The notes beneath the pieces were generated by a model that was given only the letters and a program-made list of their open reading frames with translations, did not search any database and was not told the origin of the DNA. Of a DNA stretch of 64,000 nt, positions 263 through 64,000 are shown piece by piece; positions within the stretch are counted from its first letter, which is position 1; every line of letters begins with the position of its first letter. This stretch comes from Obrimoposthia wandeli (lineage: Eukaryota). Both the position numbers and the translations under genes were made by a program. The stretch is from NCBI GenBank assembly GCA_977020255.1, contig CDROCS010003321.1, positions 1 to 64,000 of the forward strand, written 5' to 3'.

Positions 263-793
263 TTACCTCATTGCCTTACAGTTTTCATTTTCATAAACTT
301 CAAAGTAAAAATCTCTAACTTGAGTATAGCTATACACTGACTTATATGCTTTTAAATAGCCTTGAATCAAGCCCTTCTCTAAACCGATTGCCTGACCAAA
401 ATCAACCGGGGAAATTTTTCTTTGCTGCCCAATTTCAGTAAGCTTATCATTGAACAGTTTAGTTTTCTTATTCAGCTCACCCGCCGCGATAAGACACTTA
501 ACCAGCGGTCTTACTTTTCGGCTAATCTCATTAAAATCGTCCCTGTTTTCGGTGGCAGATGTAATGGCTGTCCAGGTATCACGCGAGCCTTCTTTATAGC
601 CTTCTGACTTGCCTTCAGTTAAGCCCTCTTCGCGGCCTCTTTTAAAGCCTTCTTTGTCACCAGATTTAAATCCTTCTTTCTCTCCGGCTTTCTCTCCCTC
701 GTTATAGCTCATTGTTTTGCCAAAGGTGAACGCTGCAAAACTAGCCCCTGCAAGCAATAAAATAAACACTATAACAATAATCGCTATTTTCAT
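263..793 (-). CDS. Membrane-anchored hypothetical protein with Gxxx tetrad repeats
   Basis: N-terminal hydrophobic helix followed by EGEKAGEKEGFKSGDKEGFKRGREEGLTEGKSEGYKEG (Gly every 4th residue). Confidence 0.75.
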   Translation of the reverse strand: MKIAIIVIVFILLLAGASFAAFTFGKTMSYNEGEKAGEKEGFKSGDKEGFKRGREEGLTEGKSEGYKEGSRDTWTAITSATENRDDFNEISRKVRPLVKCLIAAGELNKKTKLFNDKLTEIGQQRKISPVDFGQAIGLEKGLIQGYLKAYKSVYSYTQVRDFYFEVYENENCKAMR

Positions 794-30856: not shown

Positions 30857-32125
30857 ATGCTTAAAGTCACGCCACTAATCAATACATTTGCTGAAATAAG
30901 AAACCAACGCTCTCTATTGGTTAATCACCAACTAGAAACTCAATATCCTGATTTATCTGCTTTTCTAAGCTCGCTTGATCATTTACAGCCTGTAGCAGAA
31001 AAAGAGCTAATATTTGTATTGGAGTTTTTGCACATAATGGGCCGCAAATCTGATGGCACATATATACGCTTTAGAAATGAAATTGAACGCTGGTGTTTGT
31101 TTTGTTGGCAATCGCGCAGTAAAGGTATTTTTCAAGTGAATCGTAATGATATAGAAGCCTATATTGAGTTTGTATGGAAACCTGATAAAAACTGCATTGG
31201 AACCTCTGTACAGCAAAGGTTTAAACCACATGCCGGTCAATTTAGCTCTAATGATAAGTGGCGTCCGTTTGTCAGTAAAGTTGCAAAATCTATGACAAAA
31301 AAAATGTTAGATGTATCTCCCAATGTCGATGATTACCGCCCATCTCAAGAATCTTTAATTTCAACTTTTACAGCGATTAGTGTGCTATATCAACACGCAC
31401 AAATGGAAGAAATTTGCGATAAAAACTTCGTGCCTGTAGTAAAGAAAAGTTGTCCTTATTTAGTTAAAGAAGTTCAACGCAAGACACCTGATACATTGAG
31501 CGAATTGCAATGGGAATACGTTTTAGAAACAACCATAGACATGGCCGATAAAGACCATCAGTTTGAGCGTAATTTATTTATTATAGTCACCTTAAAATCC
31601 CTTTATTTACGGGTGTCTGAATTATCAGAACATGCGAAATGGCGCCCAAGAATGTCTGACTTTAACAAAGATGATGATGGGTTTTGGTATTTAACCGTCT
31701 TTGGCAAAGGTAATAAAATACGTTCAGTAACGGTGCCCCAAGCTTATTTACTGTTTTTAAAGCGCTACCGAGCTTATAGAGGCCTTTCTTCCCTGCCCTC
31801 GCCTGATGAGGATATAGCGATGCTTAATAAGCTTCGAGGCTCAGGTAATATGAGCGCTAGACAGGTAAGAAGAATAGTAGAACAAAGCTTTGATTATGCG
31901 ATTAAAGCATTACAAAAAGATGGCTTCAATGAGGATGCAAACTATTTAATGGCAGCTACAACACACTGGTTAAGGCATACAGGTGCAACAGCTGATGCAG
32001 GTAGCAGACCATTAAAACATCTGGCTGATGAGCTAGGCCATGCATCATCCGAAACAACCGATAAAAACTATATTCAAAGTAACATAAAGGATAGAGCGAG
32101 AAGTGGCATTAATAGAAAAATCTGA
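30857..32125 (+). CDS. Tyrosine recombinase / site-specific integrase
   Basis: Catalytic set YLRVSE (R), GKGNK (K), HWLRH (HxxR), LGH and KNY (Y). Confidence 0.92.
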   Translation: MLKVTPLINTFAEIRNQRSLLVNHQLETQYPDLSAFLSSLDHLQPVAEKELIFVLEFLHIMGRKSDGTYIRFRNEIERWCLFCWQSRSKGIFQVNRNDIEAYIEFVWKPDKNCIGTSVQQRFKPHAGQFSSNDKWRPFVSKVAKSMTKKMLDVSPNVDDYRPSQESLISTFTAISVLYQHAQMEEICDKNFVPVVKKSCPYLVKEVQRKTPDTLSELQWEYVLETTIDMADKDHQFERNLFIIVTLKSLYLRVSELSEHAKWRPRMSDFNKDDDGFWYLTVFGKGNKIRSVTVPQAYLLFLKRYRAYRGLSSLPSPDEDIAMLNKLRGSGNMSARQVRRIVEQSFDYAIKALQKDGFNEDANYLMAATTHWLRHTGATADAGSRPLKHLADELGHASSETTDKNYIQSNIKDRARSGINRKI

Positions 32126-56444: not shown

Positions 56445-56869
56445 GATAATTCCACTATTGTAATGAGAGCTAAACACTGCCTCATAGTATTATTATTTAA
56501 AGTTGCGCCAGTAATAAGACAACCCCAATTTTACAACATTGTTAACAGAGTGATGTAAAACTGTAATTTATTATGTATTTTAAGTAGTGTAATTTAGATA
56601 TTGTCGACAATACATAGTGCTTTAGTCGTAAGCAGACAATCAAGCTACTATCTAATAATAAAATATAGCTTACTGGCTTAAAAGTGCAGTCTATTTATTT
56701 GAAATAGAGTAAAAAATGCGGGGGCGGTAGTCGAGGGATATCGGTTCATACTGGTTGAGTGCCGCTAGTGCTAAGAAACCTCTACAAATGACATAAAGCG
56801 GATATTTAACAGTTCGCATTGGGAAGAGCAAACTCAACTCAGCCGCTCATCCTGTCAACACTACTTATA

Positions 56870-57313
56870 TTAGAGAGATTTTTGATAATAGAGCAGCCTT
56901 CTATCATTACAACTTCCTTCTTTAAAGTATCTATATCCAAGCTTTTCATAAATATGTTTTCCTTTTACATTATCTTCATAAACATCCAGCCATATTCTTT
57001 TGAATCTGAGCTTCTCTCTGCAATAGTTTTCCATTCTTCCAATGGCTATTTGACCAATACCTCTTTGGCTTTGATCAATCAAAATTCTGCGAAATTCTAT
57101 CTCTTTTTTATCTTGATCAGAAGCCAAAATAAAATAGCCAGCTAACTCACCATTGCTGTTATCAATACTAAGATAAATTATATTGCAGTTTGAAAAATTT
57201 CTTTGATGCGTCATTAGATCAGTACTATTAATAAATTTCTTTGCATGGGGCTGTTGCTCCATTGCTACAAATTTCTCTAGCTCGGTTTCCTTTGACTCTC
57301 TGATGCTAACCAT
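56870..57313 (-). CDS. GNAT acetyltransferase (cassette-like)
   Basis: QRGIG...IWLDVYEDN...YEKLGY. Confidence 0.85.
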   Translation of the reverse strand: MVSIRESKETELEKFVAMEQQPHAKKFINSTDLMTHQRNFSNCNIIYLSIDNSNGELAGYFILASDQDKKEIEFRRILIDQSQRGIGQIAIGRMENYCREKLRFKRIWLDVYEDNVKGKHIYEKLGYRYFKEGSCNDRRLLYYQKSL

Positions 57314-57426
57314 GTCGTTTCTCTAATGCCGTCTCTGGCAATCTGTAGTGAGTGGTCATACTTCCTTGATAATATATTTTCGCTTTTGCTCTATTTCCAT
57401 CATAATATAAAAGTCTGGACTTGACA

Positions 57427-57577
57427 CAGGCTGTGTGAAAACTCCTAAAAGTATGTAAATTACGACTTCAATATGCTTCCATAATATTACTGAATGAATA
57501 GAATCAATGACTTAGATCACGTCTGTTTTCTTAAAAACAGGAAATTAGCGGTCTAATTTGAGTTTTCACACAGTCTG
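57427..57577. mobile_element. 151-bp MITE, copy A
   Basis: 18-bp TIRs CAGGCTGTGTGAAAACTC / GAGTTTTCACACAGTCTG flanked by a GACA duplication (57423-26, 57578-81). Confidence 0.85.
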
Positions 57578-57594
57578 GACACAAAGCGGCCATT

Positions 57595-57689
57595 TTTTAA
57601 CGCTTTGCAAAGCGGATAAAATGGTTGGCTATGATAGCAAGTAACAAGCACAACCAGCTTTTTGTGTCCGTTTGAGCAACTTGTATGTA
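57595..57689 (-). other. attC-like site (R'' degenerate)
   Basis: On the - strand: ACATAC-AAGTTGCTCAAACGGAC...CCGCTTTGCAAAGC-GTTAAAA, directly after the ORF stop. Confidence 0.65.
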
Positions 57690-57700
57690 AATATCGTACG

Positions 57701-58177
57701 CTAGCTACCGACAAAACCCGTCATTTCGCAGTATCGGGTATGATAAGGAATTTTATCTACTCCAAATGTTTTGAGCGTGTGAATTTCGCGATCACGCGAG
57801 GCACTTTTCAACAGCTGATTGAATAAGAAAGGCCCTTTGAGGGCACCATTATCGATGCAGTAATAGGAGTCACCGTCACTATATATGCAGACAATGTGGC
57901 CAGAATTAGCATCAATTCCCCAGCGGCCCCAGGCTACAAAGAGTAGTTCTGCATTCTCAATACCTACGCCTATAAGGCTGACAAGAGCAAAAGCAGCGAG
58001 GTCATAGCAGAAGCCGAAACCGTCGATGTTCGTTTCTTCTGGAGTTTTCCACCAACATCCATGTTGACGAGAAGCTTTGCGCTGTTCTTCAGTGGCATAT
58101 TGCAGGTGGGATTGCATATAACTGCTCACCTTTTCTGCAGAATTAAATCTTTCTAGTTTTGATTTGAAGCTGTCCAT
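57701..58177 (-). CDS. Hypothetical cassette protein, transglutaminase/papain-like triad candidate
   Basis: GFCYDLA (C), SGHIVC (H) and YCIDNG (D). Confidence 0.6.
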   Translation of the reverse strand: MDSFKSKLERFNSAEKVSSYMQSHLQYATEEQRKASRQHGCWWKTPEETNIDGFGFCYDLAAFALVSLIGVGIENAELLFVAWGRWGIDANSGHIVCIYSDGDSYYCIDNGALKGPFLFNQLLKSASRDREIHTLKTFGVDKIPYHTRYCEMTGFVGS

Positions 58178-58194
58178 GCTCTCTTTCCTGATTC

Positions 58195-58366
58195 ACATAA
58201 CATTATAATCGTGCGAATGCGCGTTTGTAAAAATAACAGGCACTTGTTATTTATTGTTACCAATTTTCGATCTATTGATAATGTGGCAGCTTATGCTTCT
58301 TTACCAGCAGAAACGCTCATAGGGATCAAAATTAAATGTGCAAACGCGCACGAATAATGAGTAAAT
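58195..58366 (-). other. Long attC-like hairpin
   Basis: Arms ATTCGTGCGCGTTTG / CAAACGCGCATTCGCACGA; ends in GTTATGT just before the RBS of ORF 58177. Confidence 0.45.
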
Positions 58367-58419
58367 CACAAATATGACTGTTTTTAAGACCAGCAATTGA
58401 GAGTAGAAATTTAGATTCA

Positions 58420-58497
58420 AAATGACCGCTTGAGGCCGTTTCCCGCCTCTAGTGCTTCATAGAGATAAAGGCAGGACCTGACACAAAGCGGCCGTTT
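58420..58497. repeat. Intact palindromic host repeat (empty IS and MITE target)
   Basis: AAATGACCGCTTGAGGCCG...GACACAAAGCGGCCGTTT; outer arms are imperfectly complementary. Confidence 0.75.
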
Positions 58498-58604
58498 TCC
58501 TATCTCAGAAAACGGTAATAAATTGCATAGATTCATAGAAAAACTTTCAAGTATTAACTGTTAGATTTTTTCGGTTAGAACAATAGTCACTTGTTATATG
58601 TATA

Positions 58605-58901
58605 TTAAGTTGGCCACTTTAAGCCGAACATATTTATGTTATCGATGTCTTTGTCTAGATTACCTACAGATAGAGATAATTGATAATCACAATTTTTTAG
58701 TATTTCTTTTTGATCACTTTGAACTAACTTAATACGAGGTAACCACTCATCTCTGATTTGAGGAAAAGAACCATCTTTACGCTTTAAGTAAAATTTAGCA
58801 TCTCGTTGGATAAGCTTTCCCGCAAATACAGCAACATCATCTTCGCCATTTTCATCTGTTGCCCAAAGGATTAATGCGAATGATTTATCAATAAACTCCA
58901 T
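58605..58901 (-). CDS. Hypothetical cassette protein (98 aa from ATG 58901)
   Basis: AAGGAAG RBS directly after an attC; the longer ORF-track start runs through the attC. Confidence 0.65.
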   Translation of the reverse strand: MEFIDKSFALILWATDENGEDDVAVFAGKLIQRDAKFYLKRKDGSFPQIRDEWLPRIKLVQSDQKEILKNCDYQLSLSVGNLDKDIDNINMFGLKWPT

Positions 58902-58914
58902 AACTTCCTTGTAT

Positions 58915-58995
58915 ATATAACGCTCGCGGCAGCGGAAACTGGACTTGAGCTGCGAAGCAACGTCCCAGATTACCGACTGACCGTGCTTGTTATAA
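58915..58995 (-). other. attC site
   Basis: On the - strand: TTATAAC-AAGCACGGTCAGTCGG...CCGCTGCCGCGAGC-GTTATAT. Confidence 0.8.
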
Positions 58996-59001
58996 GCTTT
59001 G

Positions 59002-59415
59002 CTACTTGTGGCCATAAATACGTAAGCCCCGATCGGTCCTCTCAATTTCGAACTCACCGATTGATGCCAAAATTGATTCAGCCTTCTCTACGTTCTGCTT
59101 GAAATTCATATATGGGATTTTTTCATATTGAGGGTTTTTACCAATTGTAGGAATCTCTACCCATTCAATTCGTCTATATGCAAATGGCCCGCCGCCCACA
59201 CCACAACCACCGACAAATTTTTCCATTAAATCTTCTTCGTCAAGAAAGGTGTCTCGGAACTCGTCATCATGATCTACAAACTTCCAATAAGCTTGCCTTA
59301 ATAGGAGAGGCTCCAAGGCAATAAATAGCTTTCTCCACTTAGCATTAGACATAAACGAAACTTTGAATTTTTTCTTTATCAATTTCTTTAAGTGTTCTTC
59401 CATTCGGGCTGGCAT
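59002..59415 (-). CDS. Hypothetical cassette protein (DUF6678-like)
   Basis: MSNAKWRKLF...YRRIEW...LRIYGHK; flanked by attC sites. Confidence 0.65.
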   Translation of the reverse strand: MPARMEEHLKKLIKKKFKVSFMSNAKWRKLFIALEPLLLRQAYWKFVDHDDEFRDTFLDEEDLMEKFVGGCGVGGGPFAYRRIEWVEIPTIGKNPQYEKIPYMNFKQNVEKAESILASIGEFEIERTDRGLRIYGHK

Positions 59416-59430
59416 AATTTTACCTAGAGC

Positions 59431-59506
59431 TTATAACGCTTTGCACACGGGCGCGTGAAACGCGTCCGAGCCCCAAAGGGGCTGAAGTGATGCAACTTTG
59501 TTATAT
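59431..59506 (-). other. attC site
   Basis: On the - strand: ATATAAC-AAAGTTGCATCACTTCAGCCCCTTTGGGGCTCGGACGCG...GTGCAAAGC-GTTATAA. Confidence 0.85.
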
Positions 59507-59513
59507 TTCCTTT

Positions 59514-59800
59514 ACTCATGAAACAAGTCCCAACTAATATCTATTTCTCTTTCAGCAAGTTTGATCATTTGTTATCTTTGATAATGTAGGGCCACCCTGA
59601 GAATAAACATAATAAACGCTAATTTCCATTTCGCAGTTTTTCTTTTTTAATCTTAAAATCGAATCTACGTTTGCCATAGCATTATCAATAACAAAATCTA
59701 TATGTCGTCTAACGCCTTTAGCACACGATTGTTGGAGCACGAAGTGCGGAGACAATTCGCTGTGCCTGAACTTGTTAAAACGGCGCCACAATTAACTTTG
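59514..59800 (-). pseudogene. Frameshifted cassette gene (DUF4279-like)
   Basis: ...CEMEISVYYVYSQGGPTLS continues in another frame as QMIKLAEREIDISWDLFHE*. Confidence 0.5.
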
Positions 59801-60051
59801 ATAATAACTGTAACGCAGTATTTTTTATTTGAGCAACGGCTGAATAAAAAAGCTGGCAGCCACCGCAATATTTATTAAAGCAACCCATAACGAACATTGT
59901 GAGTTTGCCGACTTCTACTATTTTTTTAGAGAGCAACTGGAACGGAACTATTGATATATGAATTAGCACTTTCCTTGATGCCGAATACTTTGTTAATGGC
60001 ACAGATTTTCTTATTTACTACTTACTTTGACTAAGCCTTAAGGCTAGCGCC

Positions 60052-60156
60052 TATTAACGCCGCCAGCAACCGCCAGAACATGTTGGCTGCTTTTTTGCGG
60101 TTTCTTGCAAAAAAGAAGACAACGTGTGGAGGTCGGCTTGACTGGCCTTGTTAAAT
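60052..60156 (-). other. attC site (long, VCR-like)
   Basis: On the - strand: ATTTAAC-AAGGCCAGTCAAGCCGACC...TTTTTTGCAAGAAACCGCAAAAAA...TTGCTGGCGGC-GTTAATA; the upstream stop overlaps R''. Confidence 0.85.
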
Positions 60157-60486
60157 GCAGGACTTAACAATATTTTCTTGCCCTGCATATATTTTATTTA
60201 GTCCAGCTAGTAATTCTTTGAATTTATCAAAGTTTTCTGGGAATTTAATGTGTTCCAGTTTGCCAGTAATGAGTGTTACACGTACGCCATCATTCGAAAT
60301 TGTACATTCCATTACTTGATTATGACTACCATTTATCTGGTCATCATATTCGAAATAAACACCATCTTCGGAACCAACATCCTCGGTTAGTCCTATTTGC
60401 CACATGAAGTATTTATCGCCCGCCCCAAGTAAAGAAACAACAAGTACATCATTTTCGATTAATTCAATTGGTAGCTCGTAACTCAT
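60151..60486 (-). CDS. Small acidic cassette protein, Imm10-like immunity candidate
   Basis: Acidic; VYFEYDDQINGSH...CTIS pattern recalls Imm10. Confidence 0.5.
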   Translation of the reverse strand: MSYELPIELIENDVLVVSLLGAGDKYFMWQIGLTEDVGSEDGVYFEYDDQINGSHNQVMECTISNDGVRVTLITGKLEHIKFPENFDKFKELLAGLNKIYAGQENIVKSCI

Positions 60487-60498
60487 ACATTATTGGCC

Positions 60499-60715
60499 AT
60501 TTAACAGCTTCATAGGCCGAAACATTCCGTGTTTAAACACGGAACCTTTCCGCCTATCATGTTTGATTAATTTAAAATAAATCAACAATAGCATTATATT
60601 TCAATTAGTCACGTTATTTTCAAGCTTATAGCTAGTGTAGAAATGCCGCACAGTTCCGCCTAACAAGCAAAACTTGTCCGCCTCAGCATTGACTGTATAA
60701 AAAACATATAGTAGT
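60499..60715. promoter_or_regulatory. Possible attI / PintI remnant
   Basis: GTTAAAT core (- strand) at 60499-505, a 20-bp palindrome at 60525-544, and TTGACTGTATAAAAAACAT (degenerate LexA-like) on the + strand. Confidence 0.4.
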
Positions 60716-60776
60716 TTTTTGGTTTTCACGCTTAAATGACCGCTTCAGGCCCTGAGTCATTCAGTCAAGAGTTTTG

Positions 60777-62015
60777 TTAGGATAATAGTGGAGAATTCCT
60801 CTTTCTCAAAGCTTGTAAATATTTTGTCTCATCGTAAGGTTTTCGATCTTTCCAGCATTTATAAATGATACGGATCCATTTGTACGCAAGCGCTCTTATA
60901 GCAACTTGATGAGAGTTACCTTTTGCTCGTTGTTTATCGTAGTACAGTGACGCCCAATAAGATGACTGAACTGTTTTAGCTGCCCATTCAACAATGGTTT
61001 GCCTTACAAATTTTGAGCACTGCCATCGCCAATGAATCCAAGTTTTTTGGCCACTACTAACGGTGACAGGAGCAACTCCCGTATAAGCTTGTAATTGTGC
61101 TGCATTATCAAAACGATCTCTGTCTTCACCAAAGGCAACAAGTAACCTAGGACCGAGACAAAGCCCTGCTCCAGGGAGTGATTGAAAAAGTTCTGAATCA
61201 TCCATCTTGTGGAAAAGGCTGGCAATTTTTTTATCAAATTCTCGGATAGAAATAGTGGCGGTTTTGACGAGGGATGCAAGCGACTTGGCAAGCAGTTGGT
61301 AAGGCTCAATAATTGCCACATCCTCTGTTAAATCCATTACCTTTTTGCGCTGCTCTAACCGATGTTCAAGGTTAACACTTGATTGACCACCATATGATTG
61401 AAAGAACTTACGTATCGTTTTTTCATGAGCGCGTTTAAAGCAATCTAGTGTAGGCCAGCGAATAATGAAATCACAAAAAAGCTCTGTATTTCGATGAGAA
61501 AACCAGTCCAAAGGTTGAGGATAGTAGTGTTTCAACGCGCTTATAAGCTGATTTACAAAGCGACGCTTGTCGTCCACTAAGCCTCTTCTTTTCTCAACTA
61601 GCACTTCAAGTGTTCTGATTGAAGCCCCTTGTCGCTCAAGGGGTTTAAATTTATCTGGATACTTGAGCAACAAGTCTAAGGCAATTTCAGCATCTCTAGG
61701 ATCGCTTTTAGCGCCACTGGCTGTAAATGTTTCTCTGTATTTTGCGAGTGTGGCAGCATGAATTGGAAATATGGTAACAAAAGGGTATTTTTGTAATGTA
61801 AAAACGATGGGGCCCTTGTTCAACTCAACTGCTATGGCAATTTTTCCTTTGCTTTGTTTATATAGAGAGTTTATCCATTGGTCGATGGACTCTGGAGAAT
61901 GAGCTATTACTTGGAGGTGACGTTGATTTTTACCCTTATTGTAAATACAAACGTCATGTTTTTTATCAGCCCAATCTAACCCTACATAAACAGCAAAATC
62001 GTTGATAGATTTCAT
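60777..62015 (-). CDS. IS110-family DEDD transposase/recombinase
   Basis: GLDWAD, AVE, KSDPRDA, LPGAG and GVAPVTVSSG. Confidence 0.95.
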   Translation of the reverse strand: MKSINDFAVYVGLDWADKKHDVCIYNKGKNQRHLQVIAHSPESIDQWINSLYKQSKGKIAIAVELNKGPIVFTLQKYPFVTIFPIHAATLAKYRETFTASGAKSDPRDAEIALDLLLKYPDKFKPLERQGASIRTLEVLVEKRRGLVDDKRRFVNQLISALKHYYPQPLDWFSHRNTELFCDFIIRWPTLDCFKRAHEKTIRKFFQSYGGQSSVNLEHRLEQRKKVMDLTEDVAIIEPYQLLAKSLASLVKTATISIREFDKKIASLFHKMDDSELFQSLPGAGLCLGPRLLVAFGEDRDRFDNAAQLQAYTGVAPVTVSSGQKTWIHWRWQCSKFVRQTIVEWAAKTVQSSYWASLYYDKQRAKGNSHQVAIRALAYKWIRIIYKCWKDRKPYDETKYLQALRKRNSPLLS

Positions 62016-62049
62016 ATTGATATCTCCTGTTAAAAAGGTGTTATCAAGT

Positions 62050-62230
62050 GTGCCTTAGCTCTGCGAAGCAAATATAGTCAGTAATTTGAAAGTGCGTGCC
62101 CTGAGTGTTCGTTATCGAGCAAAGGCGTAACTACAATATCGAAACAAAAGCGGTAAACATCGAATGTTCTTGGCCGTATATTCGTATATTGCAGCTACCA
62201 ACTTGGCAATCATATTATGAATGATTTTAA
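62050..62230 (-). ncRNA. Predicted bridge/seek RNA of the IS110 element (boundaries approximate)
   Basis: Contains donor-matching 9-mer and 12-mer segments and target-matching segments inside stem-flanked loops. Confidence 0.7.
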
Positions 62231-62298
62231 GTCTGAATGACTATATTTGGCCGATTTCAGCCACAGATTCAAACATTCGAATGAGTTGGGATTTGACA

Positions 62299-62449
62299 CA
62301 GACTGTGTAAAAACTCCTAAAACCATGTTGAAAACGCCTTTCATACACATCTTATAAAATATCGGGCTCATAAGATCAATAGCTTAGACTATAGCTATTT
62401 TTTCAAATGCCGCTAATTGACAGTTTAATCTGAGTTTTCACACAATCTG
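62299..62449. mobile_element. 151-bp MITE, copy B
   Basis: TIRs CAGACTGTGTAAAAACTC / GAGTTTTCACACAATCTG with a GACA duplication (62295-98, 62450-53). Confidence 0.85.
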
Positions 62450-62462
62450 GACAAAAGCGGAC

Positions 62463-62566
62463 ATATCCGCGCCAACCACAGCAGCGTAGTAAGCTTGCCA
62501 TTTTTGTACGTTTTTTGCACAAAAAGTGACACGCTTACGGAGTCTTATAGCTGGTTTTTGTTATAT
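62463..62566 (-). other. Degenerate attC (R' GTT lost)
   Basis: On the - strand: ATATAAC-AAAAACCAGCTATAAGACTCCG...TTTTTGTGCAAAAAACGTACAAAA...GGTTGGCGC-GGATATG. Confidence 0.6.
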
Positions 62567-62601: not shown

Positions 62602-63018
62602 CTAACTTCCCATTCCTGGCGGTAGAATGTCAAATTTTGGCACATCGTTAGGGAAGGTTGCCCATGATGGTGCTGAAGATGTGTAGATTGACATTCTAGG
62701 AGTGAACTTATTATTTTTTAATGAAGCTGCTGACACAGAGTAAAAATTACCCGCTGTTACCTCTGCGCACAAAGCAGTGCTACAAATGCCACAGAACTGA
62801 TAATTTACCGCTTTGCCTGAATCGCCAGTACGTGTATATGATGAAGGGATGCCTTTGGTAAATTTAAAATTATCTTTTGACACCCAAAGTCCAAACCATT
62901 TGTCTGAACTAGTGAGCGTTTGACACTCCTTGCAATAGCAAAAAATAGAATTTATCGGGTCGCTATCAAAGTAAAATTCAATGTCGTTGCAACTACAACT
63001 TCCAATATGTCTTTCCAT
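62602..63018 (-). CDS. GFA-family protein
   Basis: GSCSC, CYCKECQ and FCGICST; GGAG RBS before ATG 63018. Confidence 0.88.
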   Translation of the reverse strand: MERHIGSCSCNDIEFYFDSDPINSIFCYCKECQTLTSSDKWFGLWVSKDNFKFTKGIPSSYTRTGDSGKAVNYQFCGICSTALCAEVTAGNFYSVSAASLKNNKFTPRMSIYTSSAPSWATFPNDVPKFDILPPGMGS

Positions 63019-63160
63019 GTTATCTCCGATCTGGTTGATGTCCAATGACGATATCGTAAAAACATTCAAATTTAATTTCCTTTCCAAAGATGGGACTTCA
63101 TCTTAGAGTAGATATTATATATGATAAATAACATATTCAATAATAAGAAGGCTCAATCCT

Positions 63161-63742
63161 ATGCCCTATACAAAGGCGCACAAGAACAAAACCCGGGAGA
63201 GAATTCTTGATAGCTCCTTCAGACTATTTGCAATAAAAGGTTTTGAAGGCGTTACAATCGATGATTTGATGAATAACTGTGGGCTTACTCGCGGCGGGTT
63301 TTATGCGCATTTCACGAGTAAAGCAGAACTTTACCGTGAGGCATTAAAATTCAAAGCCAGCGGCACTAAACTTGCCAGCCTTAAGCCAGAGGGCACATCT
63401 AATAAACAGTGGTTGTCTTTGTTGTTAAATAAATACCTAAGCTTGGAACATGTGAAAGGAGAGCGCTCTTTGTCTTGTCCGTTAGCGTTCTTGGCCACTG
63501 ACATCAATATGCAAGATAAGGCAATAAAAACAGCTTATGCCGATGTTTACTATGGCATGAATACAGCAATTATGGAGTATGCGAATAGCTATACAGACTG
63601 TGACGAACAAGACATTTTATCAGTAACCGCAATGATGATTGGCGCTGTCGCTATAGCTAGAACGCTTCAAAATCAAGATTCGATTGAGAGTCTACTCGCA
63701 GCGTGCAGACGAGAAGCAGGTGTGAAGTTGGGTGGAATATAG
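63161..63742 (+). CDS. TetR-family regulator
   Basis: TRERILDSS...GFEGVTIDDLM...LTRGGFYAHF.SKAELY. Confidence 0.92.
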   Translation: MPYTKAHKNKTRERILDSSFRLFAIKGFEGVTIDDLMNNCGLTRGGFYAHFTSKAELYREALKFKASGTKLASLKPEGTSNKQWLSLLLNKYLSLEHVKGERSLSCPLAFLATDINMQDKAIKTAYADVYYGMNTAIMEYANSYTDCDEQDILSVTAMMIGAVAIARTLQNQDSIESLLAACRREAGVKLGGI

Positions 63743-64000
63743 CAGCTTGATTGTGCGACGTCTCATTTACGTAAAAGTGAAAGTGATAGTCAGACAACGC
63801 GTTAATTTTTAAGCTGTTTTTAAATTTCAAACTGCAGTTTTCGAAACGTCTTACTTTCCCCGAACTGTATATGAATTAATAAGTACGTTTACTGGAAATA
63901 GGTGATCAGCAAGGTTTGTGTTGATATGCAAATAGATCATAATTTTTATGATCTACAAGAAAGCCCTTTCAACAAGGAAGATGCCACAAAATCGAGTAAG

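What the first reader, a model, noticed from the sequence alone, without database searches (positions are those of the whole stretch)
56790..62470. A palindromic repeat family placed after cassette GTT cores is the shared landing pad for two different mobile elements
Seen: the motif GACA(C/T)AAAGCGG occurs at 56790, 57578, 58480 and 62450; at 56790 and 57578 it directly abuts a GTT core. An intact palindrome lies at 58420-58497. Removing the IS (60752-62252) and MITE B rebuilds one ~75-bp copy, AAATGACCGCTTCAGGCCGATTTC...GACAAAAGCGGACAT, with the IS in its left arm at GGCC and the MITE in its right arm at GACA. Inference: an undescribed repeat that acts as a hotspot or module boundary within cassette arrays.
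Basis: partly seen in the sequence, partly recalled or inferred. Interest (0 to 1): 0.72.

Follow-up and report, generated by a model that had tools for sequence, protein, structure and literature searches.

The report
Hairpin repeat targeted by two transposons
A short hairpin-forming DNA repeat in the leaders of swappable gene cassettes of a marine bacterium is the fixed landing site of two unrelated jumping genes; each kind of targeting is known, but this repeat seems undescribed and its own role is open.

Summary
GACAYAAAGCGG lies at 56790, 57578 and 58480 (3 hits against 0.29 expected). The 62450 copy is one base shorter. Removing the IS and MITE B rebuilds an 85-bp copy.

The motif is the loop plus right stem of a hairpin repeat. 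Its minimal form, seen in other genera of the same family, is ATGTCCGCTTT-CGACAC-AAAGCGGACAT. In this genus most copies carry 35-70 extra bases between the left stem and the loop.

- An IS110-family element sits at GGCC just inside the left stem, here and independently in a related species.
- An IS1182-family element and its 151-bp MITE sit in the loop and duplicate GACA (16 of 63 distinct copies).

Both families are already known to target palindromes.

The repeat lies in cassette 5' leaders, often 0-25 bases after the preceding attC GTT core. An attC-like start follows within 38 bases in 22 of 63 copies, against 7 of 63 in a control. It is not confined to cassettes. The same 24-mer occurs in metagenome contigs of 44-60% GC, and its stem is a dispersed repeat in two alphaproteobacterial MAGs.

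The "landing pad" reading is supported. "Module boundary" is not shown. The repeat's own function is unknown. Earlier scan notes report a different attC-targeting IS1182 MITE on other DNA.

The parts
56727..56805 (+). Repeat copy U1. It is the subfamily with a conserved left part (GTAGTCGAGGGATA ... CATACTGG.TGAG ... CAAAT) and no recognisable left stem. The loop plus right stem TGACATAAAGCGGATAT lies at 56789-56805. It sits directly after the last attC, at the distal end of the array next to the acyl-CoA ligase gene.
   Evidence: same left part in contig C6097 and other copies; for the neighbouring gene.
56805..56866 (-). Last attC of the array. On the cassette strand it reads TTGACAG...CTGTTAAA. 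It follows the GNAT acetyltransferase cassette gene (56870-57313, minus strand).
   Evidence: Read by eye; Pfam GNAT. It was not scored with an attC model.
57376..57426 (+). Repeat copy U2, left part. It has a degenerate left stem ATTTTCGCTTTT (57376-57387), a filler, and TTGACA, whose last four bases GACA (57423-57426) are one copy of the target duplication.
57427..57577 (+). MITE A, 151 bp, with terminal inverted repeats CAGGCTGTGTGAAAACTC and GAGTTTTCACACAGTCTG. It is a gene-less derivative of an IS1182-family element.
   Evidence: 16 copies in the assembly. The same ends bound a 1.75-kb element in G731 whose four ORF pieces tile the IS1182 transposase profile NF033551.
57578..57593 (+). 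Repeat copy U2, second GACA plus right stem (GACACAAAGCGGCCAT). A T run follows, then TAAC at 57598-57601, the start of the next attC.
57598..57700 (-). attC of the cassette that carries ORF 57701-58177. The assignment is approximate.
   Evidence: Read by eye. It was not scored with an attC model.
58200..58400 (-). Internal integron-platform remnant. It has an attI-like site near 58200 plus a spacer homologous to the attI-intI spacer of G735 and to G732:C63. Homology stops where repeat U3 begins.
   Evidence: Alignment A3.
58420..58497 (+). Repeat copy U3, uninterrupted and of the expanded kind. Left stem AAATGACCGCTT, then GAGGCCG, a 40-base filler, the loop TGACAC, and right stem AAAGCGGCCGTTT.
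   Evidence: Copies 87-92% identical occur in contigs C4052 and C4649.
60734..60751 (+). Repeat copy U4, left stem AAATGACCGCTT plus CAGGCC. The IS110 joins at the GGCC.
60752..62252 (-). IS110-family insertion sequence, 1501 bp. The transposase gene is at 60777-62015 (412 aa). The non-coding left end (62016-62252 on the minus strand) is the place expected for the guide (bridge) RNA. GGCC lies at both junctions.
   Evidence: NF033542 at 164.8 bits against a cut-off of 140, plus PF01548 and PF02371. The left end holds ACCGCTT (the left stem) and 9-11-base matches to the element's own ends. A copy with 86% amino-acid identity sits at the same position of another repeat in G728.
62253..62298 (+). 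Repeat copy U4, middle part (GATTTCAGCC...GGGATTTGACA). Its last four bases GACA (62295-62298) are one copy of the target duplication.
62299..62449 (+). MITE B, 151 bp, about 70% identical to MITE A, in the same orientation relative to the hairpin.
62450..62464 (+). Repeat copy U4, second GACA plus right stem (GACAAAAGCGGACAT, one base shorter than the consensus). It ends about 10 bases before the GTT core of the next attC (CCAAC at 62473-62477 on the + strand).
63743..63770 (-). attI-like site at the head of the array (CAGCTTGATTGTGCGACGTCTCATTTAC). It is homologous to the intI-proximal site of G731. No intI gene follows, so the array is an integrase-less integron remnant.
   Evidence: Alignment A2; no TIGR02249 match in contig C3321.

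Best explanation
What the repeat is. The four motif copies are the loop and right stem of a hairpin-forming repeat family. The minimal form is a 28-base hairpin with an 11-bp stem and a 6-base loop: ATGTCCGCTTT-CGACAC-AAAGCGGACAT. In this bacterium's genus most copies are expanded to about 60-95 bases by unrelated filler between the left stem and the loop. Some copies have lost the left stem.

Where it lies. Copies sit in the 5' leaders of integron gene cassettes, in one orientation, often 0-25 bases after the GTT core of the preceding attC. They probably spread passively with cassettes.

The two transposable elements. Each uses a fixed position.
- (1) An IS110-family, RNA-guided element recombines at GGCC just inside the left stem of expanded copies. 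Its non-coding left end carries ACCGCTT, the left-stem sequence, where the guide RNA is expected.
- (2) An IS1182-family element inserts into the loop and duplicates GACA. So do its 151-bp MITE and a mercury-resistance-carrying derivative.

What is shown: the anatomy, the recurrence of both placements, and the family assignments. What is inferred: that the repeat itself is a passive, REP-like safe harbour, and that the IS110 is steered by base pairing to the left stem.
For: Motif enrichment:
- 3 against 0.29 expected in the window.
- 24 against 1 in the reversed-pattern control in 12 genomes of the genus.
- 58 against 17 in 190 genomes of the family.

Minimal hairpins. They occur in other genera, and the best one folds at -11.2 kcal/mol as DNA.

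Shared architecture. Ten expanded copies, three of them rebuilt by cutting out the inserted elements, align end to end.

IS1182-type insertions:
- All 16 MITE copies of the assembly, and further copies in G727, G728, G731, G732 and G733, are flanked by ..TGACA on one side and GACACAAAGC.. on the other.
- The copy in contig C2422 has TGCA on both sides, which shows a 4-bp duplication.
- Sites without an insertion carry a single GACA.
- MITEs 99% identical sit in different repeat variants with different flanks, so the insertions are recent and independent.
- The partner element encodes a broken IS1182 transposase (NF033551).
- IS1182-family members IS1272 and TnSha1 are reported to target hairpins (PMC4923244).

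IS110 insertions:
- The window copy and a G728 copy with 86% amino-acid identity lie at ..CTTCAGGCC|IS|GAT..CAGCC.. in different repeat variants.
- The left end holds ACCGCTT and matches to the element's own ends.
- Two further repeats (G732:C63, C4052) have the left stem replaced by the last 17 bases of the IS. This looks like a deletion scar.

Cassette context:
- An attI-like site heads the array.
- attC hairpins are present.
- Repeats lie ahead of ORF starts in the window and in G732:C63.
- An attC-like start lies within 38 bases in 22 of 63 copies against 7 of 63 in a control.
Against: - The repeat's own function is untested, and 'passive safe harbour' is a default reading.
- Only two IS110 insertions are confirmed. 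The C4052 case has no detectable transposase.
- The G728 IS has the same ACCGCTT although its target stem differs at 2 of 7 bases, so there is no covariation to prove RNA guidance.
- Expanded copies do not fold better than shuffles.
- 23 of 63 copies lack a recognisable left stem.
- attC sites were judged by eye and by a simple fold filter, not by a calibrated model. The control window is inflated by a TAAC inside the MITE.
- Exact conservation of a 24-mer between AT-rich marine Gammaproteobacteria and GC-rich metagenome contigs is more than a passive repeat would predict.
Confidence: 0.62

Rival explanations
1. The hairpin is itself a small mobile, non-autonomous element (REP-like or MITE-like). 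It is copied by an unidentified enzyme and tends to land beside attC sites. The two transposons then use it as they use REPs elsewhere.
For: Flanks differ on both sides of many copies. Homologous left flanks in three species end at the hairpin and diverge after it (L133, L138, L145; also L136 against L139). Two alphaproteobacterial MAGs hold 13 and 24 dispersed copies of the stem against 0 in the control. A 13-kb metagenome contig holds about 7 hairpins with the same stem and different loops.
Against: No target duplication is visible at the repeat ends. Copy numbers in the gammaproteobacterial genomes are low, 0-3 in most and 15 in G732. No Y1/RAYT transposase was found in the two MAGs, and none lies next to a hairpin in G571 or G732. 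In several copies homology runs past the left stem, which points to common descent of whole leaders and not to separate insertions.
Confidence: 0.15
2. The hairpin is a working part of cassette traffic. It could be an accessory or secondary recombination site, since 11-bp inverted arms around a 6-bp centre is the layout of tyrosine-recombinase core sites. Or it could be a single-strand hairpin next to attC that affects IntI recombination or marks where arrays meet the chromosome.
For: The minimal form has an 11-6-11 layout. Its orientation relative to the adjacent attC is fixed in every abutting copy. It sits at the distal end of the window's array, and at the point where the internal platform remnant stops.
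Against: Spacing to the GTT core varies from 0 to 55 bases, and most copies have no attC beside them. Copies tolerate 35-70-base fillers and transposon insertions in the centre. There is no link between intI and the repeat across the genus. No motif lies within 1.5 kb of four intI genes of the assembly, nor in the regions of 0.4-0.9 kb upstream of six intI genes in the genus. No dedicated recombinase was found.
Confidence: 0.1
3. There is no repeat family in its own right. The copies are simply paralogous cassette leaders, from cassette duplication, that happen to share a segment.
For: Some copies share long flanks. One example is the 220-base platform remnant next to U3 and next to a G732 copy. 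Another is the left flanks of C5945, C4649 and G732 copies.
Against: Most copies share only the 17-20-base core, with unrelated sequence on both sides and unrelated downstream genes. The core is found in other genera and in metagenome contigs of very different base composition.
Confidence: 0.06
4. The conserved right stem is part of the MITE or IS1182 element and is carried along with it, so the 'target' is an illusion.
For: 16 of 63 copies are occupied. In the assembly, occupied right stems outnumber the six exact uninterrupted ones.
Against: 47 of 63 distinct copies have no IS1182-type end beside them, and uninterrupted copies carry a single GACA. The 4-bp duplication varies together on both sides in C2422. 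One MITE is inverted relative to the hairpin. The stem does not resemble the element's terminal repeats.
Confidence: 0.03

Closest known systems
IS110-family elements that insert into repetitive extragenic palindromes under bridge/seekRNA guidance (IS621; ISPpu10 in the preprint 10.64898/2026.03.19.712850; IS1111/IS110 seekRNA in PMC11187229)
   Same: It has a DEDD transposase and a long non-coding end beside the transposase gene. The same short core (GGCC) lies at both junctions, and it is inserted at one fixed position of a palindromic repeat.
   Different: The target is a different, low-copy hairpin repeat that lies in integron cassette leaders. The guide RNA was not modelled here. Only a 7-base match to the target and 9-11-base matches to the element's own ends were found. 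That IS621 targets REPs is from my own knowledge.
IS1272 / TnSha1 (IS1182 family) of staphylococci, which insert into hairpins (PMC4923244)
   Same: It is an IS1182-family transposase whose target is a hairpin. A passenger-carrying derivative exists here too (mer genes in G733, as TnSha1 carries fabI).
   Different: Here the insertion is sequence-specific, in the loop, with a clean 4-bp duplication (GACA). IS1272 is reported to cut in the stem, delete part of the target and show no primary sequence preference.
Elements that target integron attC sites (IS1111-attC group; group IIC-attC introns, PMC3001079; the scan's own note s1-211128 on an attC-targeting IS1182 MITE)
   Same: These are mobile elements that colonise cassette arrays at a repeated, structured site.
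   Different: The site used here is not attC. It lacks the AAC...GTT boxes, lies beside attC at variable distance, and also occurs outside arrays.
REP / BIME palindromic units and their IS guests (IS1397 in the loop of E. coli palindromic units; from my own knowledge)
   Same: It is a short imperfect palindrome, intergenic, with a conserved stem, used as a landing site by site-specific IS elements. One of them inserts in the loop.
   Different: Copy number is 0-15 per genome, not hundreds. No GTAG/CTAC tetranucleotide is visible in the copies read, and no RAYT gene was found. It has a strong association with cassette leaders and a fixed orientation relative to attC.

Membership tests
IS110 family (RNA-guided DEDD transposase elements) | DEDD N-terminal domain plus the IS116/IS110/IS902 C-terminal domain | tested here: met
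   NF033542 at 164.8 bits (cut-off 140); PF01548 at 3e-24; PF02371 at 2e-16.
IS110 family (RNA-guided DEDD transposase elements) | Long non-coding end next to the transposase gene that carries guides matching both the target and the element's own ends | tested here: inconclusive
   The non-coding end is 237 bases. It holds ACCGCTT (the target's left stem), and TGACTATATTT and ACTCAGGGC (its own ends). No structure model was built. The G728 copy keeps the same 7-mer although its target differs at 2 of 7 bases.
IS110 family (RNA-guided DEDD transposase elements) | Same short core at both junctions, and a fixed target | tested here: met
   GGCC lies at both junctions in the window and in G728, at the same position of two different repeat variants.
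IS1182 family (for the MITE and its partner) | The MITE shares terminal inverted repeats with an element that encodes an IS1182 transposase | tested here: met
   A 1.75-kb element in G731 has the same ends and the same target. Its four ORF pieces cover profile positions 2-487 of 488 of NF033551. The gene is broken there, and no intact partner was seen.
IS1182 family (for the MITE and its partner) | Insertion into palindromes or hairpins (reported for family members) | tested here: met
   Insertion is in the loop of the hairpin in all copies read. The literature basis is PMC4923244.
Integron cassette array without integrase (CALIN) | Row of small same-strand genes, each followed by an attC hairpin with AAC...GTT ends | tested here: met
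   Three attC sites pass a fold filter (58915-58995, 59431-59506, 60052-60156). Others were read by eye. No calibrated attC model was used.
Integron cassette array without integrase (CALIN) | No integron integrase nearby | tested here: met
   No TIGR02249 match anywhere in the 166-kb contig C3321. An attI-like site is kept at 63743-63770.
attC recombination site (for the repeat itself) | Inverted R''/R' boxes RYYYAAC...GTTRRRY at the ends | tested here: not met
   The repeat ends are ATGNCCGCTT...AAGCGGNCAT, with no AAC/GTT boxes.
REP with RAYT (for the repeat itself) | High copy number, a conserved GTAG/CTAC tetranucleotide, and a Y1 transposase gene flanked by repeats | tested here: not met
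   There are 0-15 copies per gammaproteobacterial genome. No GTAG/CTAC is visible in the copies read (by eye, not searched). PF01797 is not found in the two MAGs, and no match lies next to a hairpin in G571 or G732. The MAGs are incomplete.
Tyrosine-recombinase core site (dif/lox type) | Two inverted arms of about 11 bp around a 6-8 bp centre | tested here: met
   The minimal form is 11-6-11. Expanded copies break this layout.
Tyrosine-recombinase core site (dif/lox type) | A cognate recombinase, and recombinant junctions at the site | not tested
   No recombinase co-occurring with the hairpin was sought systematically. The tyrosine recombinase at 30857-32125 was not examined for a link.

The most novel reading that the evidence does not exclude
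The hairpin is not a passive repeat. It would be an unrecognised functional site that spreads horizontally: either a single-strand hairpin or an 11-6-11 recombination site read by IntI or by an unidentified enzyme. It would mark where cassettes or whole arrays are joined to other DNA. That would explain its fixed orientation beside attC, its position at array ends, and the exact 24-mer shared between marine Gammaproteobacteria and metagenome contigs of 44-60% GC.
Probability: 0.12. Interest if true: 0.8.

Novelty: new variant of a known kind. Interest (0 to 1): 0.5.

Why it matters
This locus shows two unrelated kinds of site-specific transposon converging on a single 28-base hairpin. One is RNA-guided and the other recognises a hairpin. 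Empty, filled and scarred sites are available in several species, which makes it a compact natural system for comparing the two modes of target choice.

For integron biology it adds a repeated structured element that rides in cassette leaders right after attC. It brings IS elements, and in one species a mercury-resistance operon (mer genes), into cassette arrays. It may also take part in the loss of the integrase from such arrays.

The exact conservation of the hairpin across distant bacteria is unexplained and worth a test.

Tried and rejected
- Whole-assembly 12-mer searches were useless. G000 is a 1.35-Gb assembly of 6912 contigs that behaves like a metagenome, so counts were at or below the control.
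- The single genome-contig scan, with a two-arm pattern, gave 3 hits, about the number expected by chance. One lay inside a gene. Two led to alphaproteobacterial MAGs with a similar stem repeat.
- Rfam gave nothing for the window region, the MAG and metagenome hairpins, or the minimal hairpins.
- Folding of the expanded copies showed no excess stability.
- attI-remnant idea. I asked whether the motif is what lay beside attI before cassettes arrived. No motif lies within 1.5 kb of four intI genes of the assembly, or in the regions of 0.4-0.9 kb upstream of six intI genes in the genus. Rejected as a general explanation.
- REP/RAYT idea. No Y1 transposase was found beside hairpins.
- Promoter idea. 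I saw no convincing -35/-10 pair in the sense strand of the repeats, by eye only. The promoter scanner was not run.
- Terminator idea. T runs follow the stems in this genus but not in the minimal hairpins of other genera.
- The fillers of expanded copies as decayed MITE ends. There are only short resemblances (CAGGC.., ..CTGG), so this is not supported.
- A third IS110 insertion in C4052. No transposase was found at E<=1e-60. I reclassified it as a possible scar.
- A literature search for the motif letters found only primers.
- An attC covariance model was not built. My fold filter found too few clean sites.

Full report
**Setting.** The window is the first 64 kb of a 166-kb bacterial contig (C3321) in a 1.35-Gb assembly of 6912 contigs that holds many bacterial genomes. 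By HtpG identity the organism belongs to a gammaproteobacterial genus represented by genomes G724-G735 (85-91% identity).

From about 56.8 to 63.8 kb the window holds a row of small minus-strand genes. They are separated by attC-type hairpins with AAC...GTT ends. An attI-like site at 63743-63770 heads the row. It is homologous to the intI-proximal site of the integron in G731 (alignment A2). No integron integrase gene is present anywhere in the contig. The array is therefore an integrase-less integron remnant.

A second, internal platform remnant at 58200-58400 is homologous to the attI-intI spacer of G735 and to a stretch of G732:C63 (alignment A3).

**The observation.**
- GACAYAAAGCGG occurs exactly at 56790, 57578 and 58480. 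That is 3 hits against 0.29 expected, and no shuffle of 100 reached 3. The fourth copy at 62450 is one base shorter.
- The copies at 56790 and 57578 run straight into TTTAAC/TAAC, which reads GTTAAA on the cassette strand. The 62450 copy ends about 10 bases before such a core. The 58480 copy ends 55 bases before one.
- The stretch 58420-58497 has complementary ends of 10-12 bases. As a whole it folds no better than shuffled sequence.
- Removing 60752-62252 and 62299-62453 rebuilds an 85-base copy that aligns end to end with the intact one.

**What the repeat is.**
- In other genera of the same family the element is a 28-base hairpin, ATGTCCGCTTT-CGACAC-AAAGCGGACAT. The best copy folds at -11.2 kcal/mol as DNA.
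- In the window's genus most copies are expanded. The left stem (AAATGNCCGCTT) is followed by NNGGCCG and 35-70 bases of filler. The filler falls into a few unrelated subfamilies. Then come TGACAC and the right stem.
- A further subfamily has a conserved left part of its own and no left stem. The window's 56790 copy belongs to it.
- The only constant part is TGACACAAAGCRGNCRTTT.
- Among 63 distinct copies from this bacterial family, 16 carry an IS1182-type end in the loop, 12 are minimal, 12 are expanded, and 23 have no recognisable left stem.

**Enrichment and distribution.** The right-stem pattern occurs 24 times in the 12 genomes of the genus, against once for the reversed control. It occurs 58 times against 17 in the 190 genomes of the family. 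G732 has 15 copies, five of them on one strand within 8 kb of a cassette array. There each copy lies between an attC and the start of the next gene.

An attC-like start ([AT]TAAC[GT]) follows the right stem within 38 bases in 22 of 63 copies, against 7 of 63 in a control window on the other side. That control is inflated by a TAAC inside the MITE. In every abutting case the loop has the same orientation relative to the attC.

The repeat is not tied to the integrase. G730, G734 and G735 have intI and no exact copy. G728, G729 and G733 have copies and no intI.

**The MITE.** The window's two MITEs are 151 bp long, with ends CAGRCTGTGTGAAAACTC. Sixteen copies occur in the assembly.
- All but a few degenerate ones are flanked by ..TGACA on the left and GACACAAAGC.. 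on the right. In contig C2422 the flanking tetranucleotide is TGCA on both sides, which proves a 4-bp duplication.
- Uninterrupted repeats carry one GACA. The repeat therefore predates the insertion.
- MITEs 99% identical lie in different repeat variants with different flanks. The insertions are recent and independent.
- Orientation relative to the hairpin is the same in most copies and inverted in one.
- In G731 the same ends bound a 1.75-kb element in the same target. Its four ORF pieces cover the IS1182 transposase profile NF033551 from position 2 to 487.
- In G733 the same end starts a stretch that carries merT, merP and merA, inserted in a hairpin loop.
- IS1182-family members IS1272 and TnSha1 are reported to insert into hairpins, and a review cited there notes palindromic targets for the family (PMC4923244). 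The behaviour is therefore a known family trait. The sequence-specific loop insertion with a clean 4-bp duplication differs from that report.

**The IS.** 60752-62252 is an IS110-family element (NF033542, PF01548, PF02371). It is single-copy in the assembly.
- GGCC lies at both junctions.
- A copy with 86% amino-acid identity in G728 sits at ..GCTTCAGGCC|IS|GATACCAGCC... This is the same position in a different repeat variant with an intact right stem.
- The 237-base non-coding end upstream of the transposase gene contains ACCGCTT, the most conserved part of the left stem. It also contains TGACTATATTT and ACTCAGGGC, which match the element's own two ends. This fits a bridge-RNA design. I did not model the RNA, and the G728 copy keeps the same 7-mer although its target differs at two of those seven bases.
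- Both ends of the IS carry AATGAC in inverted orientation a few bases from GGCC, mimicking the displaced left stem.
- In G732:C63 and in C4052 a repeat has its left stem replaced by the last 17 bases of the IS with no IS present. A deletion between the two AATGAC words would give exactly this, so I read these as scars. This is an inference.
- The IS can only use expanded copies, because the minimal hairpin has no GGCC.

**Beyond the family.** The exact 24-mer CCGCTTTCGACACAAAGCGGACAT occurs in five JGI metagenome contigs, and a one-base variant (CTGC...) in a sixth. These contigs have 44-60% GC. A seventh, WNFL01062883.1 (57% GC), carries the exact 24-mer but is not a JGI record. One 13-kb contig holds about seven hairpins with the same stem and other loops, between ordinary genes. 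Two alphaproteobacterial MAGs hold 13 and 24 dispersed copies of AAAGCGGACATT, against 0 in the control. Whether these are homologous to the marine copies or only convergent is open, because my searches selected for the motif. No Rfam family, no RAYT gene and no paper matched.

**Reading.** The landing-pad idea is supported for both elements, and each has a known precedent. What is new is the repeat itself, its place in cassette leaders beside attC, and the convergence of two targeting modes on one small hairpin.

I take the repeat to be a REP-like passenger of cassettes that offers a safe harbour. The rivals are not excluded: that it is itself mobile, or that it is a working recombination or boundary site. 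The module-boundary claim has no direct support.

**Limits.**
- attC calls are not from a calibrated model.

**Earlier scan notes.** They agree that the window holds an integrase-less array (s1-200918) and a readable bridge RNA (s1-200845). They also report, on other DNA of this assembly, a different IS1182 MITE that targets the attC GTT itself (s1-211128) and an orphan array that keeps attI (s1-204578).

Noticed in passing
window 63743-63770 (and 63770-63870): An attI-like site and part of the intI promoter region survive at the head of the array. They are homologous to G731's intI-proximal region and to contig C4052. The integrase gene itself is gone. A TetR-family gene (63161-63742, +) and a GFA-family gene (62602-63087, -) lie between this site and the first clear attC.
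   Followed up: partly
window 58200-58400; L105 380-650 (minus view); L129 405-700: A second, internal integron-platform remnant (attI-like site plus spacer) lies inside the array. The same remnant precedes a different, long ORF in G732:C63. Homology to G735 stops where G735 has its LexA box and intI, and where the window has repeat U3. The repeat or its guest elements may have taken part in losing the integrase.
   Followed up: partly
L093 (G733:C5:176400-179400): merT, merP and merA lie directly inside an IS1182-type terminal repeat that is inserted in a hairpin loop. This is a cargo-carrying derivative of the MITE's parent element. Its far end lies outside the fetched piece.
   Followed up: no
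L105 about 330-400 (minus view, G732:C63); L062 about 2860 (minus view, C4052): These repeats have the left stem replaced by the last 17 bases of the IS110 (AATGACTATATTTGGCC, AAATGATTATATTGGCC) with no IS present. They are possible deletion scars between AATGAC words.
   Followed up: partly
L090, L091 (alphaproteobacterial MAGs); L146-L152 (metagenome contigs): Dispersed intergenic hairpins share the same 11-bp stem (ATGTCCGCTTT/AAAGCGGACAT) with various loops. There are 13 and 24 copies in the two MAGs and about 7 in one 13-kb contig. The exact 24-mer with loop CGACAC is shared with the marine genomes.
   Followed up: partly
L064 1670-3050 (C3914:254349-257398): Beside a MITE-occupied repeat lies a broken tyrosine recombinase gene, followed by a gene whose N-terminus looks like the zinc-finger domain of IS91-family transposases. 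This was read by eye only.
   Followed up: no
L131, L132 (G556:C1, 1.68 Mb and 2.13 Mb): Two hairpin copies have different left flanks but right flanks identical for at least 78 bases. The hairpin's right stem begins a duplicated segment of unknown nature.
   Followed up: no
window 60655-60690: CCTAACAAGCAAAACTTGTCC looks like a decayed short attC in the 160-base non-coding stretch between the attC at 60497-60570 and repeat U4.
   Followed up: no
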